Part shown: one piece after another, positions 25,635 to 47,923 of the stretch | Layout of the letters: each line of letters begins with the position of its first letter | Numbering within the stretch: position 1 is the stretch's first letter | Virus record (IMG/VR): IMGVR_UViG_3300017971_000185 | Location: 186,001-250,000 of that record | DNA length: 64,000 nucleotides | Direction: 5' to 3' (one strand) | Program-made: the position numbers and the translations under genes | The notes under the pieces: model-generated | Databases searched by the model: none | Told to the model about the DNA's origin: nothing | The model's input: the letters and a program-made list of their open reading frames with translations, nothing else

Positions 25635-25904
25635 ATGGCGTTCACAAACTTCGAGAAACAGATGATCGACATCATTGATCAGCGTTGTCGTCGCGGATCG
25701 ACGGACGCCGCGAAGCGTACCGTGTACCAAGGCTACGAGGCGACTTTGCTCAAGGGCGATGAGGCCGAAGTGCAGGCGCTCATTGCTACTTTTATTGCCG
25801 ATGAGGGCATGGTACAAGAGACCACGAACCAGATCACCGTTCTCAATACCAAGGTCACTGAGTTGAATACGCTCAAGACCGACATGGCTGCCTACATCGC
25901 GTGA
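25635..25904 (+). CDS. Small helical protein, paralog of 25357-25623
   Basis: MAFTNFEKQM..QRCRRG..LI..FI..LKTDMAAYI; GGAG RBS. Confidence 0.65.
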   Translation: MAFTNFEKQMIDIIDQRCRRGSTDAAKRTVYQGYEATLLKGDEAEVQALIATFIADEGMVQETTNQITVLNTKVTELNTLKTDMAAYIA

Positions 25905-26431
25905 TTACTCGTCTCGCCATTTTCGACTTCGACGGCACGCTGTTCAATGCCCCCGAAATGCCGGGCGCTTCCGACAGTTGGTACGACAGTGTAGAGTCGT
26001 TGTCACCTCCCTGCGTGCCGCAGCGGCCGACTCCCGATTGGTATATCGGGTCGACCAAGAGTGCGTTCCAGAAGGTCAAGGGCGATCCCAAGACGCATGT
26101 TGCAGTCGTGACGGGTCGCGTCGAGCCTTTGCGAGCACGGGTCGCTGAGCTTCTGCGCATGGGTGGTTTAGTCCCCGATGACCTGTTTCTGCGAAGCGGA
26201 GGCGTCACGTTGCGCTACAAAATGGCGACTCTCCGATACTTGACGAACGCACTCCGCACACTCCAGACCATCGAAATCTGGGAAGACCACAAGCACAACC
26301 TAGAGCACATGGTGCGTTACGGAAACAAGATGGGGTACTCTTGCATACCTCACTTGGTTCGAGTGAAGCGGCGCGTTTGTCCGTCTCCTGTGAAAGTCGC
26401 TGAGCGAGCATTGCGCGCAAAGTTGCTATAG
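25901..26431 (+). CDS. HAD-superfamily phosphatase, Swiss-Army-Knife RNA-repair-like type
   Basis: Motif I IFDFDGTLF.P, motif II VVTGR, DLFLR, and motif IV IWED. C-terminal tag PVKVAERAL. Confidence 0.75.
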   Translation: MITRLAIFDFDGTLFNAPEMPGASDSWYDSVESLSPPCVPQRPTPDWYIGSTKSAFQKVKGDPKTHVAVVTGRVEPLRARVAELLRMGGLVPDDLFLRSGGVTLRYKMATLRYLTNALRTLQTIEIWEDHKHNLEHMVRYGNKMGYSCIPHLVRVKRRVCPSPVKVAERALRAKLL

Positions 26432-26433
26432 GT

Positions 26434-26453
26434 GGGGCAGATCTGCCCCCTTT
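26434..26453 (+). terminator. Palindrome / possible terminator
   Basis: Perfect 16-bp palindrome GGGGCAGATCTGCCCC followed by CTTT, immediately after the HAD gene stop. Confidence 0.5.
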
Positions 26454-26567
26454 AGTCGGTAAATTTGCGCTGTGCATGCTCAGAACAGCACCCTACGGTG
26501 TAGAGCAGGGAGCACGGTTTCCGGTTTATAGGTTCCACCTACCTGTACACATACCGTGTGAAGTCCG

Positions 26568-26651
26568 ATGCGAGACAGCATTGCCATCAAGATCATTCTT
26601 GCAGGATTAGGGTTGCTGTTCGTGATTCAGCTTACGCACTGCTTAGCTTAG
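26568..26651 (+). CDS. Possible 27-aa hydrophobic peptide
   Basis: MRDSIAIKIILAGLGLLFVIQLTHCLA, read by eye and below the ORF-track cutoff. RBS is weak. Confidence 0.3.
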   Translation: MRDSIAIKIILAGLGLLFVIQLTHCLA

Positions 26652-26672
26652 TGTCTCAAACCAGGAGTCTGT

Positions 26673-28040
26673 ATGAGAGGCGCCCCGACCAAGAAAACGT
26701 ACTACCTGAGGCATCTGCCTGTGTTCCTGTGTCTCCTTCTGCTTTCAGGATGGAATCCCACAGGATTGGCGGAGATCACAGGCGACGATGGGTTGGCGGA
26801 TACTCAAGAGACAGTTTCTCAAGAAGAGACTGAAGCAAACGAATCCCCGACCGCAAACGAAACCTCAAAAGAGAAGATCGATCCTTATGCGGAGTGGGCA
26901 ACATGGTCCGAAGACCCGATCAAGAAAGAGTGCAGGTCCGATGACGAGTGCGTGCCTGATAGGACAGGACGCGAAACATACTGTCGCAAGCGAAAAGGTG
27001 CGTTAGAGGGAGATCCCGGTTACTGCCGGCCGTATTGGCTGAATCGGAAACGCCAGGCCATCCAGATGCGAAACCAACGCATCATCGTGGATGCTGTCTG
27101 CAAGCCTCCTTCGTGGTGGACCCCTGATGTGCAGTGCTGGAAATTCAAATGGCGCACTGCCAAGACATGCAACCGCAAGCACTACTGCGACCCAGACAAG
27201 CTCTCTCGATTCCTTCGTATTCCTGCGAAGCGCGAATCGACATGGGATCACCAGACGGACCACCGGCTCGATCCCGATCGTATCGCCAACCGCAACTCGT
27301 ACAAGCGGATGTATCGGAGAGGGGTATACAAGGGAAATCCGCACTTCTATGAAGGACTGACGCTCGGGAAGAGCGGCAAACCGCTCTTTCGGCTCAAGGA
27401 TCTGGAATTCCACTGCGATCCCGACAACCCGTATGACCAAAACTGCGATGGTGTCCCGGATCGTTGGAGCGTGGGCTACGGATGGTATGGGATGAACGCG
27501 GCGTTGTTTACATGGCGTTGGGATCCCATGGCTCCCCCAGAAGTCTTGGCAAAGCGTGTCCCCGCGACGCTGACAATCCTACGTGCCATGCGAAAAGCAT
27601 GGCGCAAGTTTGAGGGTGGTGTGGACTGTCGTGACGCGGACGGGAACCTCTATACCGTCGAGGGGATGTTTTCCGGCGAGCAAAAGCGGGATTACAAGAA
27701 AGACACGTGGCCTGAGCAGACTTGGTGGTCGCTTCATCGGGCTGTGTTTGGTGGGGATGTCTGCCCCATCAAGATCAAAGGCCATAAGCGGTATCGTAAG
27801 GGATTCGTCGCCAGGGCCAAGAACAAGAAAATTGATCTCGATCCAGATGAGAAAGTTACTCTGTCGATGCTCGGGAAACCGGTGCCGCGGGATCAACAGT
27901 GGGAATTTGTGCTTGCAGTCGAGGCGAAATTCGAGCCCGTGTGGCCGGAAGAAGCCGAAGGACCGGAAGAAGAAATCGAGAGAAACGATGCTATTGCCAT
28001 GAGCGATGGTGAAGAAACGGCGGTTTGGATGGCACCATGA
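26673..28040 (+). CDS. Secreted or membrane-anchored Cys-rich protein, possible lysozyme-fold domain
   Basis: N-terminal hydrophobic segment, many Cys, and AKRESTW plus GWYGMN, loosely like the ES..GLMQ motifs of lytic transglycosylases. AGGAG RBS. Confidence 0.45.
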   Translation: MRGAPTKKTYYLRHLPVFLCLLLLSGWNPTGLAEITGDDGLADTQETVSQEETEANESPTANETSKEKIDPYAEWATWSEDPIKKECRSDDECVPDRTGRETYCRKRKGALEGDPGYCRPYWLNRKRQAIQMRNQRIIVDAVCKPPSWWTPDVQCWKFKWRTAKTCNRKHYCDPDKLSRFLRIPAKRESTWDHQTDHRLDPDRIANRNSYKRMYRRGVYKGNPHFYEGLTLGKSGKPLFRLKDLEFHCDPDNPYDQNCDGVPDRWSVGYGWYGMNAALFTWRWDPMAPPEVLAKRVPATLTILRAMRKAWRKFEGGVDCRDADGNLYTVEGMFSGEQKRDYKKDTWPEQTWWSLHRAVFGGDVCPIKIKGHKRYRKGFVARAKNKKIDLDPDEKVTLSMLGKPVPRDQQWEFVLAVEAKFEPVWPEEAEGPEEEIERNDAIAMSDGEETAVWMAP

Positions 28041-28087
28041 GTTGTCTTCTGGAGTATACAGGAGTGTGGCCGATCTGAGGAAGAGTC

Positions 28088-28792
28088 ATGCGGCTTGACG
28101 GCAAGTACGTTTGCTTGCCACGTGTCCCCCGGCTTCCGGCGCACGAAGCTGCCGGTCTCAATCTCGACGTTTGCTTCATCTCTATCCGTCCGTGCAGCGC
28201 CAAGGCACGCGAGAAGATGCTGTCTTTCTTGTTCGATCACTATCGATCGTGGACAGATCTCACGGGCGAGCCGAGTTTCTCGGACATTCCCATCCGCGGA
28301 ATCTGGCGACACACGAAGGGCGAGGTTCCGGTCATCGAGATCGACTACGACCTGGACATCGGAGAGTGGGAACAGCAGTACGTGACGAGTCTTGCTCGAT
28401 GGATAGCTCTACGAGTCGGAGCGATAGGGCACGCGACTGTTGGGAAGATGAGCAAGCGTGCTCTCGCAAACTGCGGCGACACCTACAAGGATGATGTCTA
28501 CACGTACAGCGTCCCGTCGCTCTACTTCAACGGCCATGAGCGTTGGCTCGTTGTGCAGCAGGGACAGTGGAAGAATCGTCGCTCACCCGAGACGGTCGGG
28601 CTGGGAACGCTCTGCGATGAGCACGGCTTCGCGAGTCGAGAGGAAGCGCGAGGTCGTCAGACGCTCTACCACGTCCAGTCTGTTAATAGGTTTGGGCTCG
28701 GTGACGTGCGACAAGTGCGCAATTTGGGACGGGAAACTGAGGATCTGATCCGTGACGAATTGCGGCGTTTGAGCGCTCTCTGGCCTGGCTAG
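28088..28792 (+). CDS. Hypothetical protein
   Basis: 234-aa ORF with a GAGG RBS. Confidence 0.6.
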   Translation: MRLDGKYVCLPRVPRLPAHEAAGLNLDVCFISIRPCSAKAREKMLSFLFDHYRSWTDLTGEPSFSDIPIRGIWRHTKGEVPVIEIDYDLDIGEWEQQYVTSLARWIALRVGAIGHATVGKMSKRALANCGDTYKDDVYTYSVPSLYFNGHERWLVVQQGQWKNRRSPETVGLGTLCDEHGFASREEARGRQTLYHVQSVNRFGLGDVRQVRNLGRETEDLIRDELRRLSALWPG

Positions 28793-34177: not shown

Positions 34178-35341
34178 GTGAAGTGGTTAATTGAGCTTCT
34201 GAGATCTCTCTTCGGTGGCAAGAAGCCTGGGGACCCGGCTCCAGCCCCGGTAGATGATGACCGCACGCCTATTCAGCCGATGGTGGCGGAAGGGGCTGAG
34301 GAATACTTGGAAGATCTGGCCAAGGAGCCAGAGCAGAAAACGCCAGCAGAGCACGGTCTCGGCCACGTCGAGCCCGTGTTCAACCACGGGGACTCGGGAC
34401 CGAAGGTCAAGGAGTTTCAACGGTTGCTGGAGCGTCTGGGGTACGAGCTGACTCGGTACGGGGCTGACGGTTTTCTGGGCGACGAGACGCTTCAGGAAGT
34501 GTGTGACTTCCAAGATGACGATCGCGAGAAAGGCGGCATTCTCAAGACCAAGGAGCACGCGCTCAAGATTCGTGGTGTGGGTCCAGATACCTACACGGCA
34601 ATCAAGCTGGAGGCAGAGAAACTGCCGAGGTTTCCGGTTCCAGAGCCCATCATCGAGCCCAAGGCTGGCGAAGAAGATGCGGAAGGGCACACGCCACCTC
34701 ACTTCTACAAGCTGTGTGGGGACGACGGGAAAGGCGTCAAGGCCAAGTACAAGCGCAAGAACGGGTGGAAGGACATCAAGGGGATCACACTGCACCAGAC
34801 GGCTTGCTTGCTTGGTGTCAAGGCCAGTCGCTACAAGAAGGTCAGCGCCCACATCGGGATTCCTCGCGACGGCAAGATCGTCCAGATGAACGGGCTCGAT
34901 TGGGTTGTCTATCACGGCCATGCCTTCAACAAGAAGGATGTAGGGATCGAGATCGATGGCCACTTTTCAGGATTAGAGTCCTATGATGAGGCAACCAAAA
35001 CCTGGACTCCAAATCTCAAGACCTACTGGAAGCCTCAGAGCCAGCCCGATCGGAAGCCGCTATCTGTCACGGATTCTCAAGTCAGAGCGACGCTGAGAGC
35101 CATTGAGTGGATCATCGAGGAAGTCAAGAAGCATGGCGGCGAAGTGGTCTATCTCCACGCACACAGGCAGTCGAGCAAGAGCCGAACGTCCGATCCTGGC
35201 GAGAAGGTGTGGCGGCTCATCGCGCTTGAGGCGAAGGAACGGTGGGGTCTCAAGGATGGCGGCGGCAGTTTCGAGATCGGTGGTTACCCCATCCCTCACG
35301 ATTGGGCGCAGGACGTGACGTACACAGCCAAGTATCGCTGA
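34178..35341 (+). CDS. Endolysin: peptidoglycan-binding domain plus N-acetylmuramoyl-L-alanine amidase (Amidase_2 type)
   Basis: GDSGPKVKEFQRLL..LGY...GADG.LG.ET (PG_binding_1). ITLHQT, SAHIGI, VYHG..N...GIEI and AHRQ...SDPG (Zn amidase). AGGAGG RBS. Confidence 0.87.
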   Translation: MKWLIELLRSLFGGKKPGDPAPAPVDDDRTPIQPMVAEGAEEYLEDLAKEPEQKTPAEHGLGHVEPVFNHGDSGPKVKEFQRLLERLGYELTRYGADGFLGDETLQEVCDFQDDDREKGGILKTKEHALKIRGVGPDTYTAIKLEAEKLPRFPVPEPIIEPKAGEEDAEGHTPPHFYKLCGDDGKGVKAKYKRKNGWKDIKGITLHQTACLLGVKASRYKKVSAHIGIPRDGKIVQMNGLDWVVYHGHAFNKKDVGIEIDGHFSGLESYDEATKTWTPNLKTYWKPQSQPDRKPLSVTDSQVRATLRAIEWIIEEVKKHGGEVVYLHAHRQSSKSRTSDPGEKVWRLIALEAKERWGLKDGGGSFEIGGYPIPHDWAQDVTYTAKYR

Positions 35342-36531: not shown

Positions 36532-36984
36532 ATGCGGCGAGTCGTCGTTGAGAGCCCCTTCCGCACCACGGACATCAAGGTAGCTGGGCACACAATCACG
36601 ATCAAAGAGGATGACAACGTAGCGTATGCTCGGGCTTGCTTGCATGACTGCCTTCAGCGAGGCGAGTCGCCGTACGCGAGCCATCTGTTGTACACGCAGC
36701 CTGGCGTTCTTGACGATTCCGTGCCAGAGGAACGAGCGAAGGGAATCGAGGCTGGCCTGGAGTGGAAGCGGTCAGCCGATGCCTCGATTGTCTACTGCGA
36801 TCGAGGGGTCACGGCCGGGATGATTCTGGGAATCCAGCTTTCCGAGAAGATTGGCCAGCCCGTCGAGTATCGTCAATTGGGCGGCCAGTGGGCGGTCATG
36901 GAGATCGCAGCCATGAGCCTGGACGAGCTACTGGACGAGTTGAAGGTACTCGCGCATACCACGCATGGCTCTGAGAGCGCCTGA
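36532..36984 (+). CDS. Phage protein of nucleoside-deoxyribosyltransferase-like fold
   Basis: VVVESPF...YARAC..DCL.RGE.PYASHLLYTQPGVLDD..P.ER..GI.AG..W....VY.D.G...GM..GI, a widespread phage family recognised from memory. Confidence 0.65.
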   Translation: MRRVVVESPFRTTDIKVAGHTITIKEDDNVAYARACLHDCLQRGESPYASHLLYTQPGVLDDSVPEERAKGIEAGLEWKRSADASIVYCDRGVTAGMILGIQLSEKIGQPVEYRQLGGQWAVMEIAAMSLDELLDELKVLAHTTHGSESA

Positions 36985-37762: not shown

Positions 37763-38002
37763 GTGGCGCTGCCTGCTGACGTTCGGCGGCTCTTAGCTGA
37801 GGTCGAGCGTCGGCGTCAGGCGAGACTGGAGCGTATTCGCTTCCAGAACAACAACCGTCAGTATGGTCGCTCGATCTACGGAGACTTCACCTACTATCCG
37901 AGTCAGATCGAGCCAGAGCACCATCTCAACCGGGGCATCTTGGGGCTAGACAAGATTCTCAGCGGGGTTACTCCGTGGCCTCGTTTCCCGACAATCCCAT
38001 GA
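37763..38002 (+). CDS. Small hypothetical protein
   Basis: GTG start after GGGAG. Stop overlaps the next ATG. Confidence 0.55.
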   Translation: MALPADVRRLLAEVERRRQARLERIRFQNNNRQYGRSIYGDFTYYPSQIEPEHHLNRGILGLDKILSGVTPWPRFPTIP

Positions 38003-38136
38003 GCGCGAGCGCACAACGAGTTGCTTCCCGATACCTGCAAGATGCTCGTGTGGATCACTACGAGGTCGAGAAGTGGCTTGAGGAGGCTGGGGTGAAACCG
38101 GAAATCGCTGCTCCGTCCAAGACGGACGGCCAATGA
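37999..38136 (+). CDS. 45-aa protein beginning with tag MSASAQRVASRYL
   Basis: Read by eye. ATGA overlaps at both ends. Confidence 0.65.
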   Translation: MSASAQRVASRYLQDARVDHYEVEKWLEEAGVKPEIAAPSKTDGQ

Positions 38137-38384
38137 CGCTGATGGAGCAGGGAAAGAGGGCATCCATGAAGCGAACAGCAATCGTTAAGAAGCATCCCGA
38201 ACGCGGGGTTTGGTGCCTATTCGATTCTGAGGGTAAGAAGGCGCTCAACTGTTTCAAGAATCGGTACAAGGACAAGAAGCCGCCTCAAGAGGCTATCGAG
38301 CGGGCAGAGCGCATCGTGCAATTCTACAAACACCAGGCTAAGGACATGGCGGTTCGGGTCGCAGCGAGATGGCGGGGCGAATGA
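38133..38384 (+). CDS. Small protein with phage head-associated-type motif and C-terminal RVAARW tag
   Basis: IVKK....WCLF...GKK..CF......AxERxVQFYKH resembles a short motif seen in phage head-morphogenesis genes (recalled). Confidence 0.6.
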   Translation: MTLMEQGKRASMKRTAIVKKHPERGVWCLFDSEGKKALNCFKNRYKDKKPPQEAIERAERIVQFYKHQAKDMAVRVAARWRGE

Positions 38385-38810
38385 CGGCGTCAGCACAGCG
38401 CGTGGCACATGCTCATCTTCTCCGCACGGGAGCCAAGGCTCTCAGCGGTAACGCGATTCGGTTGGAAGCAAGACATCAAGAAGGAGGCTGACCAGATCAC
38501 GAGAGAGATTCGCGATGGGTTTGTCAGGAAGAACACGATGAAGCTGAGTGCCATCGTGACCGGGAAAGGCAACCTGAAGAACATCGAAGTCCTGAGTTGG
38601 GCACGTAGCAACTTTGAAGGCGATATGCTGTTCACGTTCAAGGACGGATCGAGTTTCGAGGTACGCAACAAGACCGTGACCAAGATGTCGGTCAAGGGCC
38701 GGTGGTTCTCGCAGTACCCGACGACGTTCCACAAGGTAGTCATGCCGGACGGCAAGAAGATGCCTTCTCCGTCTGAGAAGCGCATGGTCCAGGTATTCGC
38801 GGCAGTGTGA
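38381..38810 (+). pseudogene. Frame-disrupted gene: tag-bearing start in one frame, conserved body in +1 frame
   Basis: ATG 38381 (ATGA overlap) gives MTASAQRVAHAHLLRTGAK, stop at 38491. The +1 frame (38409-38810) carries IRDGFVRKN..KGNLK..FEGD..F.F.DGS.F.V.N..FSQYPTTFH.VV.PDG. Confidence 0.55.
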
Positions 38811-41593
38811 TGGGTCGGCCGAAGTACATCGGGATCTTTCTCACGCCTCAGAGTAGGCGGGCGCTCCTGCGCACCTATCCGCCCGTCCATCCCACTGTCT
38901 ACGCCGATCACGTCACGGTGATCTACGATCCCACCGATGCCGACTTGGAGAAGGTCGAATTGGGAGAGATCGTCACGGTCAAGCCGGTAGCTCATCTGGA
39001 GGACGAAAAGGCCCAGGTGTTGAGGGTGAGCATTCCGTCCTACCTGGCTCGGCTCACCAACCGGGTGCCGCACATCACAATCTCTACGGCTCGCGGTGTT
39101 GCTCCCGTGTATGCGGGCGAGCTAGCCAAGTCGCACCACACCATGATCGCCCCGAAGCCAGGCAACTACACGGGCATCGTGGACGTGGACAAGCGTAGCC
39201 ATCCGGTGCGAACGAGGATGTTCCCGCTGGCCGCTGCTCCCAAGCACTACAAGATCGATCAGGGCGACGTTCGCAAGAAGACGCGCCGTGACAAGAAGCA
39301 GGAGCTAGAGGAGGCGAAAGACCTTGGTTTCTATTCGTACACGGTGATGAAGGTCGTTCCCATCAAGCAGGTCAAGACTCCGCCGGTCTGGAACCAAGGG
39401 CGTATCGACAGGATCAAGAAGGGGCTCGCGTCTGGGAAAGCCTTTCCGCCCATCTCTCTTGCGGGGAAGCGTCCTCCCTATGAGATCAGTGACGGCATCC
39501 ATCGGACCAACGCGAGTATCGACGCTGGCTACACGCACATCCCAGCGTACTTCACGGTGCTCGTAGAGCGCCCCGATCTCTACGAAGAGCCCGAGAAGGA
39601 GAAGCCCAAGCTACGGCCAGGTACTTGGGTCAAGATGCGCGCGTCTCGGGACGGTTTCGATTGGGCGGTTGTGATCGAGTACGTGGGTCCTCGCGTGTGG
39701 AAGGGAGTCAAGCGTCACTTGTACGGTCTCGTAGCGGGCGATACGAACAAGTCCGACTTCATCGGAGACTGGATGGACTCCGAGTTTGATCCCGTGCGGG
39801 AAGGACAAGTACCGAGGAAGGTGCGTGAGACGATTCTGGCAGACCCGTTTGCTGATCATCTTCCGCAGCGACGTGTTGCTGCTCGCCATCTCATCGCTCG
39901 TGACTATTTCGAGATAGGCGACATCATCTTGTACGGGAAGTACAAGAACAAAAAAGCACGGATTGTGGCGTGGGGCAAGGACCACAAGGGAAACCCCACT
40001 GTCGAGATTGAGCCCATCCCCAAGGGCCGCAAGAAGAACAAGACCCTCGGCCTGTTCCGCATCTGGCACGCGCTCCCGCCAGAGGAGCGGAAGAAGGAAG
40101 CGCAGGTTCGGACGGCGGAATTTTCTCCCAATTGGGATTGGCCCAACGTCCTGAAGAATGTGGCCATCTTCAACCAAATCCACAAGACGGTGAAGGGATG
40201 GACGCGCCTGAGCGACAAGGACCGAGTACCGGCGCTCCAGAAAGAAAAGCCGTTCATCGGACAACTGAAGAAGGATGTCGCGGGCGGAACCTTCCCTGGT
40301 CAATGGGAAGCAGGTTTGGCTGAGTGGCTCTATCAGTGGTGGGGATTCGAGTGCCCCAAGAAAGGCACTTCTGATCTGCTTCATCATGAGCTTTCGGTTC
40401 TGTATCGTCATGTTGCCATCGAGCCCAACAACTATTTACTCAAGAAGGATGTCGAAAATACAGCACGAGTGTTAGACACGTACTCCAAGGAGGTCAACGA
40501 CTGTCTCAAGCAAGCCGGGCCAGCGCGTCTGACCTACTCGGGGTTCAAGGTCTGGAATCCGCAGCGCATGCCCGACAAGATGATGCGCAAGCTGTTGAGC
40601 GGCGTCGATCACATCATGGCGATCTTCCGCAAACGAGGGATGGAGAAGGCGCTCACGAAAGGCGTCAAGGACATCCTCGTTCGCAAGTGGACTAGCAACG
40701 ATGGAAAGTATGTTGCCTGGTACTTCTCCCGTGAGCGCCGCATCGTCCTGACCGATGCTGTTCTCAAACCCGGCGGTGGTCGGCTCATGGATCGCTGGAT
40801 CTCCGAAGTGTTCCTCCATGAGTTTGGGCATCATGTCCACATGACGTACCTCCATCCCAACGCTAAGAAGGAATGGGATGCCGGGTGGAGTCCTGTTGAG
40901 TCGGCACGGGAGAAGGTCGAGCAAGAATTCAAGATCACCGGGAAGGACCGAAGGCGGTTCTTCGATCTCATCGAACGGAATGATTGGAGTCCGTCGAAAG
41001 CGGCACGAAAGCTCAAGGGCTTGGACAAGCTACGGTTCATGGCGTGGCTGCGCAACCCTGGTTTGGGAGAGCCCTTGATTACACCTAAGATTGTTCGGTT
41101 GACGCGTCGAGGGAAGGACGTGTTTGATTTCTTGCGGGACCCAGAGGGGCATTGGCGTCAACAACACCCTGGAGACCTGCTCAGTCATCTCCAATATGAG
41201 TCGAAGGAGCAGCAGAGAGCGGAAGAGGATGCTTATGTGGCAAAGCAAGTAGCTCAGAAGCTCCGCCGCCTTCGCAACGATGTTTTGTCTCTCGATTGGG
41301 AAGGCGCAGACAAGATTCCCCGAGCGTTGCAAGACGAGATTCGCAAAGAGGACAAGAGCGTAGACGCTGCGATAGATGCTTTGGAAGTCCCCACGGATTA
41401 TGCGAGAACGAATGAGATGGAGGACTTTGCCGAGTCTTTTGTTGCCTTCGTGGCGAACCCGGCAAAGCTCTCGGACCAGGCCAAGTTCCGCATGCAGCGT
41501 GCTCTCAGCCTCTCCGGGCTCTACGGCAAGCCGATTATGAGGCTGGCTGAGCGGGTCGCTCAGACCTGGCGTCGAAGGCAGGCCGCAGCCTAG
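38807..41593 (+). CDS. Multidomain (polyvalent-type) protein: 2H phosphoesterase + ParB/Srx-like + SH3-like + HExxH zincin metallopeptidase
   Basis: HVT (ADHVTV) and HIT (VPHITI) 2H pair; PPISL..YEISDGIHR; VFLHEFGHHVH plus DYARTNEMEDFAESF. Tags RRVAARHL (internal) and ERVAQTW (C-terminal). Confidence 0.78.
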   Translation: MMGRPKYIGIFLTPQSRRALLRTYPPVHPTVYADHVTVIYDPTDADLEKVELGEIVTVKPVAHLEDEKAQVLRVSIPSYLARLTNRVPHITISTARGVAPVYAGELAKSHHTMIAPKPGNYTGIVDVDKRSHPVRTRMFPLAAAPKHYKIDQGDVRKKTRRDKKQELEEAKDLGFYSYTVMKVVPIKQVKTPPVWNQGRIDRIKKGLASGKAFPPISLAGKRPPYEISDGIHRTNASIDAGYTHIPAYFTVLVERPDLYEEPEKEKPKLRPGTWVKMRASRDGFDWAVVIEYVGPRVWKGVKRHLYGLVAGDTNKSDFIGDWMDSEFDPVREGQVPRKVRETILADPFADHLPQRRVAARHLIARDYFEIGDIILYGKYKNKKARIVAWGKDHKGNPTVEIEPIPKGRKKNKTLGLFRIWHALPPEERKKEAQVRTAEFSPNWDWPNVLKNVAIFNQIHKTVKGWTRLSDKDRVPALQKEKPFIGQLKKDVAGGTFPGQWEAGLAEWLYQWWGFECPKKGTSDLLHHELSVLYRHVAIEPNNYLLKKDVENTARVLDTYSKEVNDCLKQAGPARLTYSGFKVWNPQRMPDKMMRKLLSGVDHIMAIFRKRGMEKALTKGVKDILVRKWTSNDGKYVAWYFSRERRIVLTDAVLKPGGGRLMDRWISEVFLHEFGHHVHMTYLHPNAKKEWDAGWSPVESAREKVEQEFKITGKDRRRFFDLIERNDWSPSKAARKLKGLDKLRFMAWLRNPGLGEPLITPKIVRLTRRGKDVFDFLRDPEGHWRQQHPGDLLSHLQYESKEQQRAEEDAYVAKQVAQKLRRLRNDVLSLDWEGADKIPRALQDEIRKEDKSVDAAIDALEVPTDYARTNEMEDFAESFVAFVANPAKLSDQAKFRMQRALSLSGLYGKPIMRLAERVAQTWRRRQAAA

Positions 41594-41736: not shown

Positions 41737-41764
41737 ATGCACTTTTGGTAGATTCTGGCGTAGA
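41737..41764 (+). promoter_or_regulatory. 28-nt phage promoter motif, copy G
   Basis: ATGCACT-TTTGGTA-GATT-CTG-GCGTAGA, 10 nt before ATG 41775. Confidence 0.65.
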
Positions 41765-41774
41765 GGGCGTAGAG

Positions 41775-42914
41775 ATGAAGGTTCTCAAGCTACAGATCTT
41801 CCATGGCAACGAGATGAAGGAATGGCGCACGATCGAGGACGACGTGACCAAGATCGGGACGCTCCAGTCCTCGCACATCCAGCTTGAAGGGCTAGCGCGC
41901 ATGCACGCGGTGATCGAGCGCAGCACGGACACGTTCCGGCTCATCGATCTCGGCGGCGTGCCTCCGACTTTCGTCAATGGCGAGCAGATCAGGCAGGCCG
42001 AGATTCAGAATGGCGACATGATCCACTTCGGTCGAGAGGGTCCGTGGAGTATGCGCGCGACCATCGAGACAGCCGTCGAGGTTGACGTGGACCGCAAGCC
42101 GGAGGCCCCTGACTCTTTGTCACGGGATGAGCTTTTCGAGACTTTCGCCAACGCAGCCCAACGACGCAAGGAGCGAGAGGACAAGGAGGATATTCCAGAC
42201 GATGAGCTTTTTGATCATTACTATCGCAAGTACCAACGTCGTAAGGCTCAGGAGCAAGAGCGCGAGAAGGACTCGGGGCAAGAGAAGTTGTTTGAGAGCC
42301 TGTGCGAACAGATGGAGGAGCTTGTAGAGGAGCGCTCAGAAGACCAGAAGAATGACATTACACGGATGCTTACCCAGGTGAAGTCTCTGTGGAAGAGCAA
42401 GGATCCTGAAAGAAAGCAAGATCAGATCCGACGCCTTGAGGATATTATTCAGGCTCTCAAGCAAGACAGGCAAGAGAAGGAGCAGATGGCGCACGCTTTG
42501 ATCGATGCCACGAGCCAAATCATTGCGGAAGGCACGATGGAAGAGGCGTTCAAGATCTCCGAAGAAGAGGCGCTTGAGAAAGCCGCCGATCTCGTCATGG
42601 AGGTCAGTCAGTACAAGGATGCCCTCGGTCTCCTTCAGGTGTTTTCTGGGCCAAAAGAAGGCGGAGCAGGGGACAAGAAAGTCTTTCTCAAGGGGAAACA
42701 TCTCTTGGAGAAACAATTGTCGGGGGAGGTCGCTAGAAAGAGTCTGTTCTTGAGTCTCTACATCGCGCGGGCAGGCGGCTGGACGTGGGAGCAACAACAA
42801 AAGGAAATGCTGAAAGCGCGGCGTAACCTGACTGAGGAGGAGCTTCAAGTGCTTGAAAACCATCCCGCAGTCAAGAAGGTTTTTGAAGCCATGGAGAGGC
42901 AGAGCGGTAGCTAG
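41775..42914 (+). CDS. FHA-domain protein with acidic coiled-coil C-terminus
   Basis: TKIGTL.SSHIQL..LARMHAVI...LIDLG....TFVNG.....I.NGD.I.FG. Confidence 0.78.
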   Translation: MKVLKLQIFHGNEMKEWRTIEDDVTKIGTLQSSHIQLEGLARMHAVIERSTDTFRLIDLGGVPPTFVNGEQIRQAEIQNGDMIHFGREGPWSMRATIETAVEVDVDRKPEAPDSLSRDELFETFANAAQRRKEREDKEDIPDDELFDHYYRKYQRRKAQEQEREKDSGQEKLFESLCEQMEELVEERSEDQKNDITRMLTQVKSLWKSKDPERKQDQIRRLEDIIQALKQDRQEKEQMAHALIDATSQIIAEGTMEEAFKISEEEALEKAADLVMEVSQYKDALGLLQVFSGPKEGGAGDKKVFLKGKHLLEKQLSGEVARKSLFLSLYIARAGGWTWEQQQKEMLKARRNLTEEELQVLENHPAVKKVFEAMERQSGS

Positions 42915-42938: not shown

Positions 42939-43613
42939 ATGCTGAAGCCGCAGGACATCGTGCATGTAGGAGGGACGCTGACCGCCGCTAGCGTGTTGGC
43001 TGCCTACCACCAAGGAGTGTTTCCTTGGTTCTCGCACGATGGCAGCGACGTGCTTTGGTGGTCGCCAGATCCTCGATTCGTGCTCGACGTGAACGAGGTA
43101 CACAGAGGGCGCACCGTTCGGAAAGCGCTCAAGAAGCTCGACTTCACGATCGACGCTGAGTTTGACCAAGTGATACAGGAGTGTGCCGACAAGCGCTATG
43201 CAGCCAGGTCTGCGATGGGAACCGATCGGACCGACACTTGGATCACTCCCCGGATGTTGAAGGTGTACCGGAAGCTCTATCGAGAAGGCTACGCGCACAG
43301 CGTCGAGGCGTGGAAGGATGGCGATCTAGTAGGTGGTCTTTACGGTCTGTGCCTGGGCAACGTGTTCTTTGGCGAGTCCATGTTTGCGCACATGCCCAAT
43401 GCGTCCAAGGCGGCTCTTGTGTTCCTTTGCGATAAGCTGAAGGAAGCGGGTGTCGGAAGGATCGATTGTCAGATGGAGACTCCGCTGATGCGCTACATGG
43501 GAGCCAAATTTGTCAGTCGGGCGCAGTTTCGAGATGGTCTCTTGTTGGGCTTGCTCACCAAGCCCACGCTCCGAGGAAAGTGGTCTGTAGATGGGTTGCC
43601 AGACGCAGAGTGA
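42939..43613 (+). CDS. aat: Leucyl/phenylalanyl-tRNA--protein transferase
   Basis: LAAYHQGVFPW, WWSPDPR, F.QVI..CA, TWIT, AHSVEAW...LVGGLYG...G.VFFGESMF...NASKAAL, IDCQM.T. Lacks the usual short N-terminal extension. Confidence 0.95.
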   Translation: MLKPQDIVHVGGTLTAASVLAAYHQGVFPWFSHDGSDVLWWSPDPRFVLDVNEVHRGRTVRKALKKLDFTIDAEFDQVIQECADKRYAARSAMGTDRTDTWITPRMLKVYRKLYREGYAHSVEAWKDGDLVGGLYGLCLGNVFFGESMFAHMPNASKAALVFLCDKLKEAGVGRIDCQMETPLMRYMGAKFVSRAQFRDGLLLGLLTKPTLRGKWSVDGLPDAE

Positions 43614-44959: not shown

Positions 44960-45065
44960 TCACCAAGCCTGTCAAGGACCCTGAGCGTCGAAAGGCTCGA
45001 AAGCGCAAGAAGGCGCCGAAGGATCCTCGACAGGGGCTTCGCTTGTACGCTATCCTGCGAAGCCA

Positions 45066-45320
45066 GTGACGTTTGGGTACAGGAAGTCACGTGACGAGTG
45101 GTCATGCTACGACTGCGGCATGGTGCGGCCGGAGTACCACATGCTCTGGGATGGTGTGTGGGAGAAAGCGTGGGACGGAAAGCAGCCACCGCACGAGGAT
45201 CCTCGCGATCCTCGTCAGCCGTTGCAGTTGTGCTTCGCGTGCTTAGAGAAGCGACTCGGGCGTCCGTTGGCCAACGCAGACTTCACCACCGCGCCGGTCA
45301 ACAATTTCTGGCTTCGTTGA
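45066..45320 (+). CDS. Small zinc-finger protein
   Basis: CYDCG ... LCFACLEKRLGRPL...DFT.APVN. Confidence 0.65.
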   Translation: MTFGYRKSRDEWSCYDCGMVRPEYHMLWDGVWEKAWDGKQPPHEDPRDPRQPLQLCFACLEKRLGRPLANADFTTAPVNNFWLR

Positions 45321-45344
45321 GCGCGTTGTCTGTTTCCTATGCGT

Positions 45345-45519
45345 CTATGCGTCAAACGCCTCGACGCGGATCAGCGGCGCCGCGCCTCCACCGATCATCA
45401 TGATACGGCCGGGGCTCAGCGAGCAGAGGTTCTCGATCTCCTGCTCATCGAGTCCGTCCCGATTGTCCGTCGAGTGGATAGCGCTGGCTGTTGGTGATCG
45501 TCTCTCTCGTCCGTGCCAT
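45345..45519 (-). pseudogene. Frame-disrupted paralog of 45809-46066
   Basis: AGGAG RBS and ATG 45519 give MARTRETIT. The +1 frame continues SAIHSTD..., matching PALRSAD of the paralog, and ends GGGAAPLIRVEAFDA. Confidence 0.45.
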
Positions 45520-45538
45520 CGTCTCAGTCTCCTGTGGG

Positions 45539-45805
45539 TTACGAATTCTTCGGAAAGTGCTCCTGTAGGTACGCCGCGACTGCGCGGCCGAGGGGGGTGA
45601 TGTCCCACGTACGCTCACAATCGCCGTAGGACACAGAGAGCACGCCAAGATCAACAAGCGGATTCAGGTTGACCGCGGTTTGGCGATTACCACGCCGCGG
45701 CTCGGTCCAGGGGCCACACTTTGCAAAGTCGGTGAGATAGAGGCGCTGGTGAACCTCCAGCCCCTCCGCTACCTCTGCCGGTGTCCGCTCTGGTGTGGGG
45801 GTCAT
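45539..45805 (-). CDS. Small winged-helix-like protein
   Basis: LVDLGVL...WDITPLGRAVAAYL. Confidence 0.6.
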   Translation of the reverse strand: MTPTPERTPAEVAEGLEVHQRLYLTDFAKCGPWTEPRRGNRQTAVNLNPLVDLGVLSVSYGDCERTWDITPLGRAVAAYLQEHFPKNS

Positions 45806-45808
45806 GGC

Positions 45809-46066
45809 CTAGATGACCTCCTCTGCGACGACGGGAAGGCCCGTCTCTCGGCTCAGTTCCTCGGCCGCCGCAAGCGCATCGTCTCGGTCTAGGTGGGTGT
45901 CCAGCGTCTCTGTGGTGATCGCGCCGCCAGACGCGTCGAGTCGGTCCCGGCTCACGATCCATAGAGGATCGGCGCCCGGGTCGCTGTCCGAGTCGAGCCA
46001 GACGCTCAGGACGGTGCGCGTCTCGTCGGCGCTGCGCAGGGCCGGGGTGATCTTTGTCCGTGCCAT
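45809..46066 (-). CDS. Hypothetical protein
   Basis: GGAGG RBS and ATG 46066 (MARTKITP...). Confidence 0.6.
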   Translation of the reverse strand: MARTKITPALRSADETRTVLSVWLDSDSDPGADPLWIVSRDRLDASGGAITTETLDTHLDRDDALAAAEELSRETGLPVVAEEVI

Positions 46067-46093
46067 TGTCTCTGCCTCCGTCATCGGTGGGGG

Positions 46094-46279
46094 TCATGGG
46101 ATCCTCCCCTCGACACGATTGTGATAGTCTGCCCGTGCCTTCAAGTAGTCCGCGACTGCGCGGCCGAGCGGCGTGCGCCGTCCACCCCGCTGCACGAGAC
46201 CGGCAGCGACAAGGGCATCAAGATCGACGCCATACAGGACAGCGCGCGCGTCGTCGGTGACTTGGATGATGATGCTCAT
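46094..46279 (-). CDS. Small winged-helix-like protein
   Basis: LVAAGLVQ...RTPLGRAVADYL. Start coupled to the upstream TAA. Confidence 0.55.
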   Translation of the reverse strand: MSIIIQVTDDARAVLYGVDLDALVAAGLVQRGGRRTPLGRAVADYLKARADYHNRVEGRIP

Positions 46280-46389
46280 TACTTCGTCCCACTCACGAAG
46301 ATCAGCACCTTGCCGAGCAGCCAAAGGCCGAGTCCGGCCGGGATGCAAATGACCGCGGTAAGTACGAGCAGACTGAGGATCGCTTCCAT
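46279..46389 (-). CDS. 36-aa membrane peptide
   Basis: MEAILSLLVLTAVICIPAGLGLWLLGKVLIFVSGTK, the first gene after promoter copy E. Confidence 0.55.
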   Translation of the reverse strand: MEAILSLLVLTAVICIPAGLGLWLLGKVLIFVSGTK

Positions 46390-46398
46390 TTCACCCTC

Positions 46399-46426
46399 TC
46401 TACGCGGGATTCCGGCGAAAGTATAT
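46399..46426 (-). promoter_or_regulatory. 28-nt phage promoter motif, copy E
   Basis: Minus strand ATATACT-TTCGCCG-GAAT-CCC-GCGTAGA. Confidence 0.7.
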
Positions 46427-46489
46427 TGCGGGAGGCGCGCGCTCTACAAGGCTGTGGAACGCTGTCTAAAAGCGAAATTCGGAGCCTCT

Positions 46490-46517
46490 ATGCACTTTTC
46501 CTTCGATTCCGCGTAGA
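46490..46517 (+). promoter_or_regulatory. 28-nt phage promoter motif, copy F (divergent from E)
   Basis: ATGCACT-TTTCCTT-CGAT-TCC-GCGTAGA. Confidence 0.62.
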
Positions 46518-46533
46518 CACGAAAGAGGGATTG

Positions 46534-46977
46534 GTGCGCAAACCGCACAAAGGCACCTTACGAGCACTCGCCAAACGATTCCGGGCTTGGCTCGTCACGC
46601 TTCCTCAGATCGCCTCTTTCGATGAGGATCTCTGTGGGGCGTGTGCGATTGCTTCGGATGGTCTGGCTCGCTTTCTTCGTAAAGAAGGTTTCGACGCTTG
46701 GTTTGTCGAGGGCCAGTACGTTCCTTGCGCCAACAGCACTCGGTCAGAGGACTTTTACGGTGCCGAGACCAACCATTGTTGGGTCGAGGTTGGTCGGAAG
46801 TGGATCGTGGACATCACTGCTAGGCAGTACAGTGGGCGATTCCCCGAGGTCTACATTGTGCCCACAGAGCATGAGGACTATCATAGATTCCGGCGAGGGC
46901 CGTATGCTCTTCGATGCGTGCGGCGGGAGTGGCCGAAAGACCACCATCCACTCGGTCGAAAGCTACGCATCAGGTAG
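46534..46977 (+). CDS. Papain/transglutaminase-like Cys-His-Asp protein
   Basis: LCGACAIAS ... NHCWVEV ... IVDITARQY. Start set at GTG 46534 after GAGGGA. Confidence 0.62.
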   Translation: MRKPHKGTLRALAKRFRAWLVTLPQIASFDEDLCGACAIASDGLARFLRKEGFDAWFVEGQYVPCANSTRSEDFYGAETNHCWVEVGRKWIVDITARQYSGRFPEVYIVPTEHEDYHRFRRGPYALRCVRREWPKDHHPLGRKLRIR

Positions 46978-46981
46978 GAGT

Positions 46982-47923
46982 ATGACTGAGATTTACATGA
47001 TGGCTGGCGTGCCGGGTTCGGGCAAGAGCACGGAAGTCAAGAAGTTGCCGCCGCACGTTTACCTGAGCCGGGACAAGGAAGGCGGCAAGGTTTTGAGCTT
47101 GCTTCCGAAAATGCATAAGGCGATTGCGGACGGGGCCGAGATCATCGTGCTCGACTGTACTTTCCTTTTGCCTGAGCACCGTGAGCCCTTTCTTCAAGCC
47201 GCGGAAAAGGCTCAGGTGCCGGTTCATCTCAAGTTTCTCGATGTCAGTAAGGAACAGGCTCAATTCAACTTGTGCTGGCGCATGTGCGAGCGCTACGGGC
47301 ACGTGCTGCGGTCCGAAGAGATGGACGAGTACAAGCACGATCCAAACATGTTCCCGCCGACTGTTCTGTTCGGATGGTTCAAGAAAATGGTGCGGCCTCA
47401 GTATGCTGAGGGTTTCGATTCGGTCGAGGTCATCAAGATCGGGCGCTGGCCTTTGCCTTCTGAATTCAAGAACAAGGCGTTCATCGTGGATTACGACGGG
47501 ACGGTACGGGAGACCAAGAGCGGAGAGATCTACCCGACTGATCCCTCCGACGTGCGAGCACTCCCACAGGCGGCTGAGAAACTCCAGAAGATAGCCAAGG
47601 AAGGAAGGCTGTTGCTTGGAGCGAGCAATCAGTCTGGTGTCGCCAAGGGTCTTCTGACCATGGAGACGGCCAGGGCATGTTTCGAGGAGGCCAATCGCCA
47701 GCTTGGCGTAGACATCGAGTATGCCTTCGACTACAGTCGGTCTGGGCCGATCACTTCCTGGCACCGAAAGCCCATGCCGGGAATCGGGGTAGACTTCATC
47801 TGGAAGCATCGGCTGGACCCGAGCCAGTGTGTTTTTGTGGGCGACATGACTTCGGACGAGACCTTCGCCCAGCGATGCGGTTTCCAGTTTGAGTGGGCAA
47901 AGGATTTCTTCGGACATGAATGA
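46982..47923 (+). CDS. Bifunctional polynucleotide 5'-kinase / 3'-phosphatase (P-loop kinase + HAD IIIA)
   Basis: MAGVPGSGKST (Walker A), VLDCT, and HAD motifs VDYDGT, SNQSGV, RKPMPG, FVGD..SD..FA. Confidence 0.88.
   Translation: MTEIYMMAGVPGSGKSTEVKKLPPHVYLSRDKEGGKVLSLLPKMHKAIADGAEIIVLDCTFLLPEHREPFLQAAEKAQVPVHLKFLDVSKEQAQFNLCWRMCERYGHVLRSEEMDEYKHDPNMFPPTVLFGWFKKMVRPQYAEGFDSVEVIKIGRWPLPSEFKNKAFIVDYDGTVRETKSGEIYPTDPSDVRALPQAAEKLQKIAKEGRLLLGASNQSGVAKGLLTMETARACFEEANRQLGVDIEYAFDYSRSGPITSWHRKPMPGIGVDFIWKHRLDPSQCVFVGDMTSDETFAQRCGFQFEWAKDFFGHE

What the first reader, a model, noticed from the sequence alone, without database searches (positions are those of the whole stretch)
25901..47923. Dispersed RNA-end-healing toolkit (HAD phosphatase, 2H phosphoesterase, PNKP)
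Seen: a HAD of the Swiss-Army-Knife type at 25901, a 2H domain at 38807, and a kinase-HAD fusion at 46982. Established: T4 Pnk with Rnl1 repairs tRNAs cut by the PrrC anticodon nuclease, and healing needs 2',3'-cyclic phosphodiesterase, phosphatase and 5'-kinase steps. Inference: all three healing activities are covered. The two tagged enzymes could act at entry, while the untagged PNKP under the ECF-type promoter acts after expression. No ligase is in this window.
Basis: partly seen in the sequence, partly recalled or inferred. Interest (0 to 1): 0.62.

Follow-up and report, generated by a model that had tools for sequence, protein, structure and literature searches.

The report
Phage RNA-end repair enzymes, no ligase
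A 497-kb uncultured phage carries three scattered genes for enzymes that clean up broken RNA ends. This is a repertoire already described for jumbo phages, but here it lacks a classical RNA ligase and looks tied to rebuilding tRNA 3' ends.

Summary
All three genes lie at the stated coordinates.

- **25901-26431:** a HAD_SAK_1 phosphatase.
- **38807-39235:** a CNPase/Trl1-CPD-like 2H phosphoesterase. It is the first module of a 928-aa polyvalent protein that also holds ParB-like and HExxH modules.
- **46982-47923:** a kinase-HAD polynucleotide kinase/phosphatase.

The window is part of a 497-kb IMG/VR phage record. Elsewhere that genome holds 46 tRNA genes, a Tpt1/KptA RNA 2'-phosphotransferase, a second 2H domain fused to a CCA-adding nucleotidyltransferase, and a 225-aa OB-less ATP-dependent ligase. 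It has no Rnl1, Rnl2 or RtcB.

In other viral contigs the HAD_SAK_1 domain is fused to this same 2H subfamily. In 13 of 57 distinct loci it is fused to, or lies directly downstream of, a CCA-adding enzyme. It was never next to an RNA ligase.

My best reading is RNA 3'-end healing, especially of tRNA, that feeds CCA rebuilding, with Pnkp and perhaps the small ligase handling internal breaks.

What it does, including any role at entry, is untested. The "ECF promoter" cannot be told from chance.

The kind is already described for jumbo phages (Iyer et al. 2021), so this is a new member of it.

The parts
25901..26431 (+). g0181, 176 aa: stand-alone HAD_SAK_1 phosphatase. DFDGT at 25925-25939; T71/G72/R73; K107; D129.
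26393..26413 (+). Degenerate C-terminal tag KVAERAL on a predicted terminal helix. Orthologues carry canonical RVASRY / RVAARWL at the same place.
38807..41593 (+). g0203, 928 aa: polyvalent protein. Order of modules: 2H, ParB/Srx-like, tag, small domain, HExxH module, tag-like C-terminus.
38807..39235 (+). 2H phosphoesterase module (aa 1-143) of the CNPase/Trl1-CPD kind. HVTV at 38909-38920, HITI at 39071-39082.
39239..39856 (+). ParB/sulfiredoxin-like module (aa 145-350) with DGIHR at 39491-39505. The same module exists as stand-alone proteins of about 220 aa elsewhere.
   Evidence: for the module and motif. The family assignment rests on the motif and on Iyer 2017. Pfam gave no match.
39872..39892 (+). 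Canonical tag RVAARHL between modules.
40139..41566 (+). Widespread module of about 470 aa with HEFGHH (40817-40834). Presumed zincin-like metallopeptidase of polyvalent proteins. RLAERVAQTW at 41540-41569.
   Evidence: most of the 1241 relatives match here; only weak Peptidase_Mx1/ATLF hints in relatives
46982..47923 (+). g0214, 313 aa: polynucleotide 5'-kinase / 3'-phosphatase in the T4 domain order. P-loop at 47006-47032, DYDGT at 47489-47503. No tag.
46426..46977 (+). Upstream ORF P0177 (at most 183 aa; start uncertain, possibly GTG 46535 after AGAGGGA). It ends 4 nt before the Pnkp start, so it is probably co-transcribed. No family match.
46456..46483 (+). Present, but not shown to be a promoter.

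Best explanation
The three genes are RNA-end-healing enzymes. They belong to a dispersed, genome-wide tRNA maintenance and repair repertoire of a 497-kb phage.

Inferred mechanism:
1. Host metal-independent RNases leave 2',3'-cyclic-phosphate and 5'-OH ends on tRNAs or other RNAs.
2. The CNPase/Trl1-CPD-like 2H module of g0203 opens the cyclic phosphate. A LigT-like 2H in g0525 elsewhere in the genome may do the same. By analogy with this 2H clade, the product would be a 2'-phosphate.
3. The HAD_SAK_1 phosphatase g0181 removes the remaining monophosphate.
4. The cleaned 3'-OH end can then be extended by the CCA-adding nucleotidyltransferase at the C-terminus of g0525. This route needs no ligase.
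5. For internal breaks such as anticodon-loop cuts, the Pnkp g0214 phosphorylates the 5'-OH and dephosphorylates the 3' end.
6. Sealing would fall to the 225-aa OB-less ATP-dependent ligase in the tRNA island or to a host ligase. Tpt1 could remove any 2'-phosphate left behind.

Shown here: domain identities, catalytic motifs, folds, gene inventory, and fusions and neighbourhoods in other phages.

Inferred: substrates, the order of steps, product chemistry, and which enzyme seals.

The two tagged proteins belong to the polyvalent-protein world. Whether they are packaged and act at entry is not known.
For: Domain identities and intact catalytic motifs.

Folds:
- 2H against CNPase: Z 13.9, rmsd 2.4 A over 130 aa, far above Acb1 at Z 7.3.
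- Best viral structural matches are the CPD parts of giant-virus Trl1-like 'RNA ligase' proteins.
- HAD against the Pnkp1 and T4 Pnkp phosphatase domains.

Fusions that link the two window families:
- HAD_SAK_1-2H proteins of 322-401 aa in L050, L029, L021 and L032.
- P0174 reads HAD_SAK_1, tag, then a 2H that is 50% identical to g0203's.

Link to tRNA 3' ends:
- 2H-CCA-HAD (L037), CCA-HAD-2H (L047) and HAD-CCA (L038) fusions.
- A CCA-type NTase gene lies directly upstream on the same strand in 10 further loci, giving 13 of 57 distinct loci in all.

Own genome:
- g0525 carries a ThpR/LigT-like 2H (TIGR02258, E 2.4e-7) and a CCA/PcnB NTase (PF01743 70 bits, PHROG 2244 at 3e-30).
- Tpt1 passes NCBIfam's equivalog cut-off, 247.8 against 239 bits.
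- There are 46 tRNA genes.
- The small ligase lies inside the tRNA island. A 55%-identical homologue lies 2.2 kb from a 16-tRNA array.

Literature: this repertoire is described for jumbo phages (PMC7824862).
Against: - No biochemical data exist, and none of the substrates can be read from sequence.
- The three genes are 12 and 8 kb apart, and none is next to another RNA-repair gene in this genome.
- There is no canonical RNA ligase. The small ligase scores as a DNA-ligase-type NTase, and its homologues' neighbourhoods are uninformative.
- The Pnkp phosphatase is nearest to mammalian PNKP and to the DNA 3'-phosphatase models.
- HAD_SAK_1 is fused to topoisomerase IB in six contigs, which hints at DNA ends.
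- Fusions inside polyvalent proteins can join unrelated effectors. Iyer et al. 2017 argued that polyvalent-protein 2H domains are not repair enzymes.
- The co-occurrence counts have no control set of contigs that lack HAD_SAK_1.
Confidence: 0.55

Rival explanations
1. DNA-end processing. Pnkp, the HAD and the small ATP-dependent ligase heal and seal DNA breaks with 3'-phosphate and 5'-OH ends. These could be made by host nucleases, or be 2',3'-cyclic-phosphate nicks left at embedded ribonucleotides by topoisomerase IB. The 2H would open the cyclic ends in DNA-RNA junctions.
For: - The Pnkp phosphatase is closest to mammalian PNKP (E 2e-17) and matches TIGR01664 DNA 3'-phosphatase.
- The only ATP-dependent ligase scores with DNA-ligase and LigD models.
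- HAD_SAK_1 is fused to Topoisom_I in L024, L010, L016, L073, L015 and L036.
Against: - HAD_SAK_1 is fused or adjacent to tRNA CCA-adding enzymes in 13 of 57 loci.
- The 2H is nearest to RNA and nucleotide cyclic phosphodiesterases.
- The genome adds Tpt1, which acts on RNA 2'-phosphate.
- The genome already has an NAD-dependent DNA ligase for replication.
- T4-type Pnkp enzymes act on both RNA and DNA (established knowledge).
Confidence: 0.15
2. Counter-signalling. The 2H module of the polyvalent protein degrades host immune nucleotides (cyclic oligonucleotides, 2'-5' oligoadenylate, 2',3'-cyclic NMPs), as Acb1 does, or acts as an RNase like Usb1. The HAD and Pnkp would be unrelated.
For: - Iyer et al. 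2017 propose exactly this for 2H domains of polyvalent proteins, because they never saw them with RNA ligases.
- Acb1 is among the structural matches: Z 7.3, E 3e-4.
- There is no RNA ligase in this genome.
Against: - CNPase stands far above Acb1 and Usb1 (Z 13.9 against 7.3 and 4.7).
- The same 2H subfamily is fused to HAD_SAK_1 and to CCA-adding enzymes. That makes sense for RNA 3' ends, not for signal degradation.
Confidence: 0.12
3. No common function. These are three unrelated housekeeping enzymes (for example a nucleotide phosphatase, an effector module and a kinase) that happen to lie within 22 kb of a very large genome.
For: - The genes are dispersed and separated by unrelated genes: an endolysin, an FHA protein and a Leu/Phe-tRNA protein transferase.
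- The related Pnkp locus L003 shows no conserved neighbours.
Against: - Fusions of the very same families occur in other phages.
- All three families are catalogued as RNA-repair components of jumbo phages.
- Dispersal is usual in these genomes. In the contigs that have RNA ligases, these also lie far from the HAD gene.
Confidence: 0.1

Closest known systems
Jumbo-phage RNA-repair repertoire (Iyer, Anantharaman, Krishnan, Burroughs, Aravind 2021, PMC7824862, section 3.4.9)
   Same: It has the PNK-HAD fusion, the stand-alone 'Swiss-army-knife' HAD, 2H phosphoesterases, KptA/Tpt1, a CCA-adding enzyme and a large tRNA set, all dispersed in a very large phage genome.
   Different: That survey reports the healing enzymes as generally congruent with ATP-grasp RNA ligases. 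Here Rnl1, Rnl2 and RtcB are all absent. Both 2H domains and the CCA enzyme sit inside polyvalent proteins.
T4 Pnkp + Rnl1 repair of PrrC-cut tRNA-Lys
   Same: An N-terminal P-loop 5'-kinase with a C-terminal DxDGT HAD 3'-phosphatase in one protein of about 300 aa.
   Different: There is no Rnl1 or Rnl2. By sequence the phosphatase is nearer to mammalian PNKP and HAD-IIIA, and no T4 Pnkp chain matched at E <= 0.01. Extra 2H and HAD enzymes are present, which T4 does not need.
Fungal/plant Trl1 + Tpt1 pathway and vertebrate CNPase
   Same: The 2H fold is closest to CNPase and to the Trl1 kinase-CPD structure 6u05. A kinase and a Tpt1 are present.
   Different: No Trl1-type ligase domain was found. 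The domains are on separate proteins. The 2'-phosphate product is assumed, not shown.
E. coli multifunctional CCA-adding enzyme (HD domain with 2',3'-cyclic phosphodiesterase, 2'-nucleotidase and phosphatase activities; recalled from established literature)
   Same: It couples 3'-end healing chemistry to a class II CCA nucleotidyltransferase. The phage versions do this by fusion or adjacency of 2H and HAD_SAK_1.
   Different: The healing domains belong to different superfamilies (2H and HAD instead of HD). In this genome the HAD is encoded about 240 kb from the CCA enzyme.
Polyvalent proteins of phages and conjugative elements (Iyer et al. 2017, PMC5512222)
   Same: g0203, g0525 and g0526 are large multi-module proteins with an HExxH module, and in g0203 also ParB-like and 2H modules.
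   Different: The authors saw no link of such 2H domains to RNA repair. Here the same 2H subfamily is fused to HAD_SAK_1 and CCA-adding enzymes. In the passages of that paper I read, I found no mention of a shared RVAxRYL-like junction or terminal motif.

Membership tests
HAD_SAK_1 (PF10307) | Score at or above Pfam's gathering cut-off | tested here: inconclusive
   The query scores 25.2 against a cut-off of 25.6 bits. All 22 homologues carry PF10307, and fused relatives score 30-85 bits.
HAD_SAK_1 (PF10307) | HAD catalytic motifs I-IV (DxDGT, T/S, K, D/E-D) | tested here: met
   D9, D11, T13, G72, R73, K107 and D129 are invariant in 20 sequences. The HAD fold has pLDDT 94.
HAD_SAK_1 (PF10307) | Phosphatase activity on RNA 2'/3'-phosphate ends | not testable with these tools
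   Needs enzyme assays.
2H phosphoesterases, CNPase/Trl1-CPD clade | Two HxT/S motifs on a 2H fold | tested here: met
   H35/T37 and H89/T91 are invariant. CNPase matches at Z 13.9, rmsd 2.4 A over 130 aa.
2H phosphoesterases, CNPase/Trl1-CPD clade | Pfam tRNA_lig_CPD (PF08302) at or above cut-off | tested here: inconclusive
   The query scores 15.3 against 23 bits. Relatives P0050 (60% identical) and P0174 (50%) score 29.3 and 26.1.
2H phosphoesterases, CNPase/Trl1-CPD clade | Hydrolysis of a 2',3'-cyclic phosphate to a 2'-phosphate | not testable with these tools
   Needs product analysis.
T4-type polynucleotide kinase/phosphatase (Pnkp) | N-terminal P-loop kinase plus C-terminal DxDGT HAD phosphatase in one chain | tested here: met
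   AAA_33 38.8 bits, PNK3P 33.9 bits, TIGR01662 59.9 bits above its cut-off of 44.6, PHROG 505. Motifs.
T4-type healing-and-sealing system (Pnkp + Rnl1/Rnl2) | A partner RNA ligase of the Rnl1 or Rnl2 family in the genome | tested here: not met
   PF09511 and PF09414 give no match in the 497-kb record, which CheckV rates 94% complete. RtcB is also absent.
Trl1/Tpt1-type pathway | RNA 2'-phosphotransferase Tpt1/KptA | tested here: met
   PF01885 166 bits. NF002014 247.8 bits against a cut-off of 239. It lies outside the window, at G000 369099-369602.
Trl1/Tpt1-type pathway | Trl1-type ligase domain | tested here: not met
   The only ATP-dependent ligase is a 225-aa OB-less NTase that scores with DNA-ligase models.
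Polyvalent proteins (Iyer 2017) | Several unrelated effector modules plus a zincin-like HExxH module in one polypeptide | tested here: inconclusive
   The modules recur independently in 1241 proteins, and HEFGHH and DGIHR are present. No Pfam model reaches significance for the ParB-like or peptidase parts.
Polyvalent proteins (Iyer 2017) | Packaging into the virion and delivery with the DNA | not testable with these tools
   Needs virion proteomics.
Acb1 anti-CBASS 2H nucleases | Closest structural and sequence kinship to Acb1 | tested here: not met
   Acb1 7t27 scores Z 7.3 against CNPase at Z 13.9. In BFVD, Acb1 ranks below the giant-virus Trl1-like proteins.

The most novel reading that the evidence does not exclude
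The RVAxRYL-like motif may be a shared address or processing signal. It sits at termini of small proteins and at module junctions of HExxH-bearing polyvalent proteins, and it is conserved at the end of HAD_SAK_1 domains across many distant phage contigs. It might act as a capsid-targeting peptide or as a cleavage site for the metallopeptidase modules.

If so, these phages would load tRNA-end repair modules (2H, HAD, CCA-adding enzyme) into the virion. They would then repair or rebuild tRNA 3' ends from the moment of entry, without any ligase.
Probability: 0.15. Interest if true: 0.75.

Novelty: new member of a known kind. Interest (0 to 1): 0.4.

Why it matters
tRNA cleavage is a common last-line bacterial defence, and phage answers to it are known mainly from T4 (Pnkp plus Rnl1). 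This genome adds an example of a different solution. It has its own near-complete tRNA set together with end-healing enzymes, Tpt1 and a CCA-adding enzyme, but no classical RNA ligase.

The recurrent fusion or adjacency of HAD_SAK_1 with CCA-adding enzymes and with CNPase-like 2H domains gives a concrete, testable function for a phage family that has not been characterised biochemically, as far as I know. It also questions the earlier view that 2H domains of polyvalent proteins are unrelated to RNA repair.

The shared terminal or junction motif, if it proves to be a packaging or processing signal, would be a handle for finding injected effectors in huge uncultured phages.

Tried and rejected
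- **Annotated relatives:** megablast of 23 kb of the window against 50,697 phage records found nothing, so no annotated close relative was available.
- **2H domain in viral contigs:** the pattern search found no relative. The stand-alone search found one protein, so the 2H alignment stayed shallow at 5 sequences.
- **The small ligase g0399:**
  - It shows no BLAST kinship to the small PF09414 RNA ligases of other HAD-bearing contigs.
  - The neighbourhoods of three homologues carried no RNA-repair genes.
  - Its substrate therefore stays open.
- **Second 2H:** a profile comparison of the g0203 2H with the N-terminus of g0525 showed no specific relation. They are different 2H families.
- **Other families in the genome:** there is no Macro domain and no PF13563 match.
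- **Host:** the Leu/Phe-tRNA protein transferase gave mixed phyla at 41-51% identity. The host is unknown, so the presence of a host RtcB could not be checked.
- **ECF-type promoter:** only one GGAAC-N18-TCGGA lies upstream of the Pnkp operon, and such patterns show no clear intergenic excess.
- **Tagged proteins:** PHROGs and Pfam gave no structural annotation for g0039, g0040, g0168, g0170, g0515 and g0526.
- **Literature:** Burroughs & Aravind 2016 (NAR 44:8525), which defined the SAK HAD families, is not held in the library. I could not check whether the HAD-CCA linkage is already described there.
- **Co-occurrence counts:** the counts in 31 contigs lack a control set. I use them only descriptively.


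Full report
**Setting.** The window is bases 186001-250000 of a single 497,194-bp IMG/VR virus record. CheckV rates it 94% complete and its GC content is about 58%. Nearly all genes in the window are on the + strand. The first 25 kb encode very large, probably structural, proteins, and the rest encodes small and mid-sized genes. No annotated phage in GenBank is close enough for megablast.

*Gene 1, 25901-26431 (176 aa).*
- It scores 25.2 bits for Pfam HAD_SAK_1, a hair under the cut-off of 25.6, and matches PHROG 415.
- Every one of its 22 database homologues carries PF10307.
- HAD motifs I-IV are invariant in the alignment.
- A confident model (pLDDT 94) superposes best at low rmsd on the phosphatase domains of Pnkp1 (Pnkp1/Rnl/Hen1 complex) and T4 Pnkp.

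*Gene 2, 38807-41593 (928 aa).*
- Its first 143 residues carry two HxT motifs.
- Pfam's tRNA_lig_CPD is weak on the query, but two relatives pass the cut-off.
- A model with pLDDT 82 aligns to the CNPase catalytic domain at Z 13.9 (rmsd 2.4 A, 130 residues). All other 2H families score Z 7 or less, with Acb1 at 7.3 and Usb1 at 4.7.
- Among viral models, the best matches are the CPD parts of Trl1-like 'RNA ligase' proteins of giant viruses.

*Gene 3, 46982-47923 (313 aa).*
- It is a P-loop kinase followed by a DxDGT HAD-IIIA/PNK3P phosphatase, and mouse PNKP matches at E 2e-17.
- The start at 46982 is right. A 43%-identical relative aligns from residue 3, and a separate ORF (46426-46977) ends 4 nt upstream.

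**Gene 2 is a polyvalent protein, not a simple 2H enzyme.** An exhaustive HMMER search found 1241 relatives.
- Most match only residues about 445-920, a module with HEFGHH that occurs alone (about 470 aa) or inside proteins of up to 2952 aa.
- Others match only residues 145-350, a module with the ParB/sulfiredoxin-type DGIHR motif.
- Only three match the 2H part.

This is the architecture described by Iyer et al. 2017: effector modules plus a zincin-like peptidase module thought to process the polypeptide, often packaged in the capsid. Pfam itself gives no significant call for the ParB-like and peptidase parts, so those two labels rest on motifs and on that paper.

**The rest of the genome changes the picture.**

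| Feature | Result |
|---|---|
| Rnl1, Rnl2, RtcB | none found |
| NAD-dependent DNA ligase | present, split into two ORFs |
| ATP-dependent ligase | 225 aa, nucleotidyltransferase domain only, all motifs present, no OB domain |
| tRNA genes | 46, at 310-376 kb |
| Tpt1/KptA RNA 2'-phosphotransferase | inside the tRNA island; passes NCBIfam's equivalog cut-off |
| g0525 (1510 aa polyvalent protein) | ThpR/LigT-like 2H at the N-terminus, an HExxH module, and a CCA-adding/PcnB-type NTase at the C-terminus |

The small ligase belongs to a phage family of about 210-230 aa that scores with a mix of DNA-ligase, RNA-ligase and capping-enzyme models. It lies inside the tRNA island.

**Comparative evidence ties the HAD and the 2H together, and both to tRNA 3' ends.** HAD_SAK_1 genes occur in at least 114 viral stretches, many on contigs above 100 kb. 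Among 57 distinct loci:
- **HAD-2H fusions.** Several encode HAD_SAK_1-2H fusions of 322-401 aa whose 2H part is a relative of g0203's. The fragment P0174 reads HAD_SAK_1, tag, then a 2H that is 50% identical to g0203's.
- **CCA-adding enzyme.** Three loci fuse the HAD to a CCA-type nucleotidyltransferase, two of them with a 2H as well. Ten more have that enzyme's gene immediately upstream on the same strand, with gaps of -30 to 635 nt.
- **RNA ligases.** PF09414 ligases exist in 10 of 31 large HAD-bearing contigs (3 of 8 complete ones), but never next to the HAD.
- **Topoisomerase IB.** Six contigs fuse the HAD to topoisomerase IB. This keeps a DNA-end role open.

**Most likely mechanism.**
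1. The 2H modules open the 2',3'-cyclic phosphates left by metal-independent RNases.
2. HAD_SAK_1 removes the resulting monophosphate.
3. The clean 3'-OH is a substrate for the CCA-adding enzyme. E. coli achieves this healing-and-rebuilding logic with the HD domain of its CCA enzyme (recalled from the literature, not tested here).
4. The Pnkp supplies the classical 5'-kinase/3'-phosphatase for internal breaks.
5. Tpt1 can clear 2'-phosphates.
6. Sealing, where needed, would fall to the small ligase or to a host enzyme.

Only identities, motifs, folds, inventory and associations are shown. Substrates, product chemistry and the order of steps are inferred. I put 0.55 on this reading. The rivals are DNA-end repair (0.15), counter-signalling or RNase activity of the 2H, as Iyer et al. 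2017 proposed (0.12), and unrelated functions (0.10).

**The tag and the promoter.**
- **The motif is real.** The pattern [RK][VIL]Ax[RQKM][YWHF][LIVRKW] occurs 21 times in my ORF set, against 2.2 (sd 1.5, maximum 7) in shuffles.
- **Where it sits.** It lies within about 15 residues of a terminus in small proteins, or between modules of g0203, g0525 and g0526.
- **It is widespread.** It follows the HAD domain in 14 of 57 distinct homologues from other contigs, against 0.3 expected, and many more have near-matches.
- **In the window genes.** g0181 has only a degenerate copy (KVAERAL). g0203 has a canonical internal copy and a degenerate C-terminal one. The Pnkp has none.
- **Its function is unknown.** One tagged protein is a papain-like peptidase; most have no family. 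Packaging, processing and action at entry remain conjecture.
- **The promoter.** The 'ECF-type promoter' is a single GGAAC-N18-TCGGA at 46456-46483, upstream of the ORF that precedes the Pnkp. Nine of 49 such patterns are intergenic, against 12.5% intergenic DNA. That is no evidence for a promoter class.

**Novelty.** Iyer et al. 2021 already list PNK-HAD, the stand-alone Swiss-army-knife HAD, 2H, KptA, CCA-adding enzymes and large tRNA sets as the RNA-repair equipment of jumbo phages. The finding is therefore a new member of a known kind. Its own features are:
- the absence of any classical RNA ligase;
- a CNPase-like 2H inside a polyvalent protein;
- the recurrent HAD-CCA-2H linkage, which runs against the 2017 view of polyvalent-protein 2H domains;
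- the shared motif.

I could not read Burroughs & Aravind 2016, so part of this may already be in print.

Noticed in passing
Whole genome. In the window: 2080-2925 (C-terminus), 37975-38136 (N-terminus), 38133-38384 (C-terminus), 39872-39892. Also L089 (g0525, g0526).: An RVAxRYL-like motif occurs 21 times against 2.2 expected. It sits at protein termini or between modules of HExxH-bearing polyvalent proteins, and it is conserved after HAD_SAK_1 domains in many other viral contigs. Its function is unknown; it could be a targeting or processing signal.
   Followed up: partly
window 42939-43613 (+): A phage-encoded leucyl/phenylalanyl-tRNA protein transferase (Pfam Leu_Phe_trans, 210.7 bits), an N-end-rule enzyme that uses aminoacyl-tRNA. 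The nearest cellular homologues are 41-51% identical and come from mixed phyla.
   Followed up: partly
window 41745-42914 (+): An FHA-domain protein (43.6 bits) lies directly downstream of the polyvalent protein g0203.
   Followed up: no
window 34178-35341 (+): A probable endolysin: Amidase_2 plus a peptidoglycan-binding domain.
   Followed up: no
G000 160096-161271 and 162111-163202 (outside the window; L002): The NAD-dependent DNA ligase is split into two ORFs about 840 bp apart. The first holds the adenylation part, the second the Zn/HhH/BRCT part. An inserted element, an intron or a true split was not examined.
   Followed up: no
G000 310-376 kb (outside the window; L001, L004): A tRNA island with 46 tRNA genes also holds Tpt1, the small ATP-dependent ligase and an ORF that looks like ribosomal protein bL12 (L004:962-1336). 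The bL12 reading is by eye and was not tested.
   Followed up: partly
L024, L010, L016, L073, L015, L036 (other viral contigs): HAD_SAK_1 is fused to a eukaryotic-type topoisomerase IB catalytic core in six contigs. A 2952-aa relative of g0203's C-terminal module also carries Topoisom_I.
   Followed up: partly
window 53181-53399 (+) and 52522-52785 (+): Small ORFs that by eye resemble translation initiation factor IF-1 and an RRM-type RNA-binding protein (sequences). No family search was run on them.
   Followed up: no
window 57494-58915 (-) and L004:3118-3480 (-): A repeated peptide of the form (A)LIRLA(Y/H)ENP...ILPLL occurs at the C-terminus of one ORF, the N-terminus of the next, and again in an ORF of the tRNA island. 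It is a second recurring terminal motif and is unexplained.
   Followed up: no
window 46426-46977 (+): The ORF just upstream of the Pnkp has a Cys...His...Asp pattern (CGAC, NHCW, DIT) reminiscent of transglutaminase-like or papain-like enzymes. There is no Pfam or PHROG match.
   Followed up: partly
G000 393624-394193 (L184): A papain-like peptidase (C39/C70-like) carries the C-terminal tag KVALRYL.
   Followed up: partly
window 36532-36984 (+): A DUF7768 protein (85 bits).
   Followed up: no
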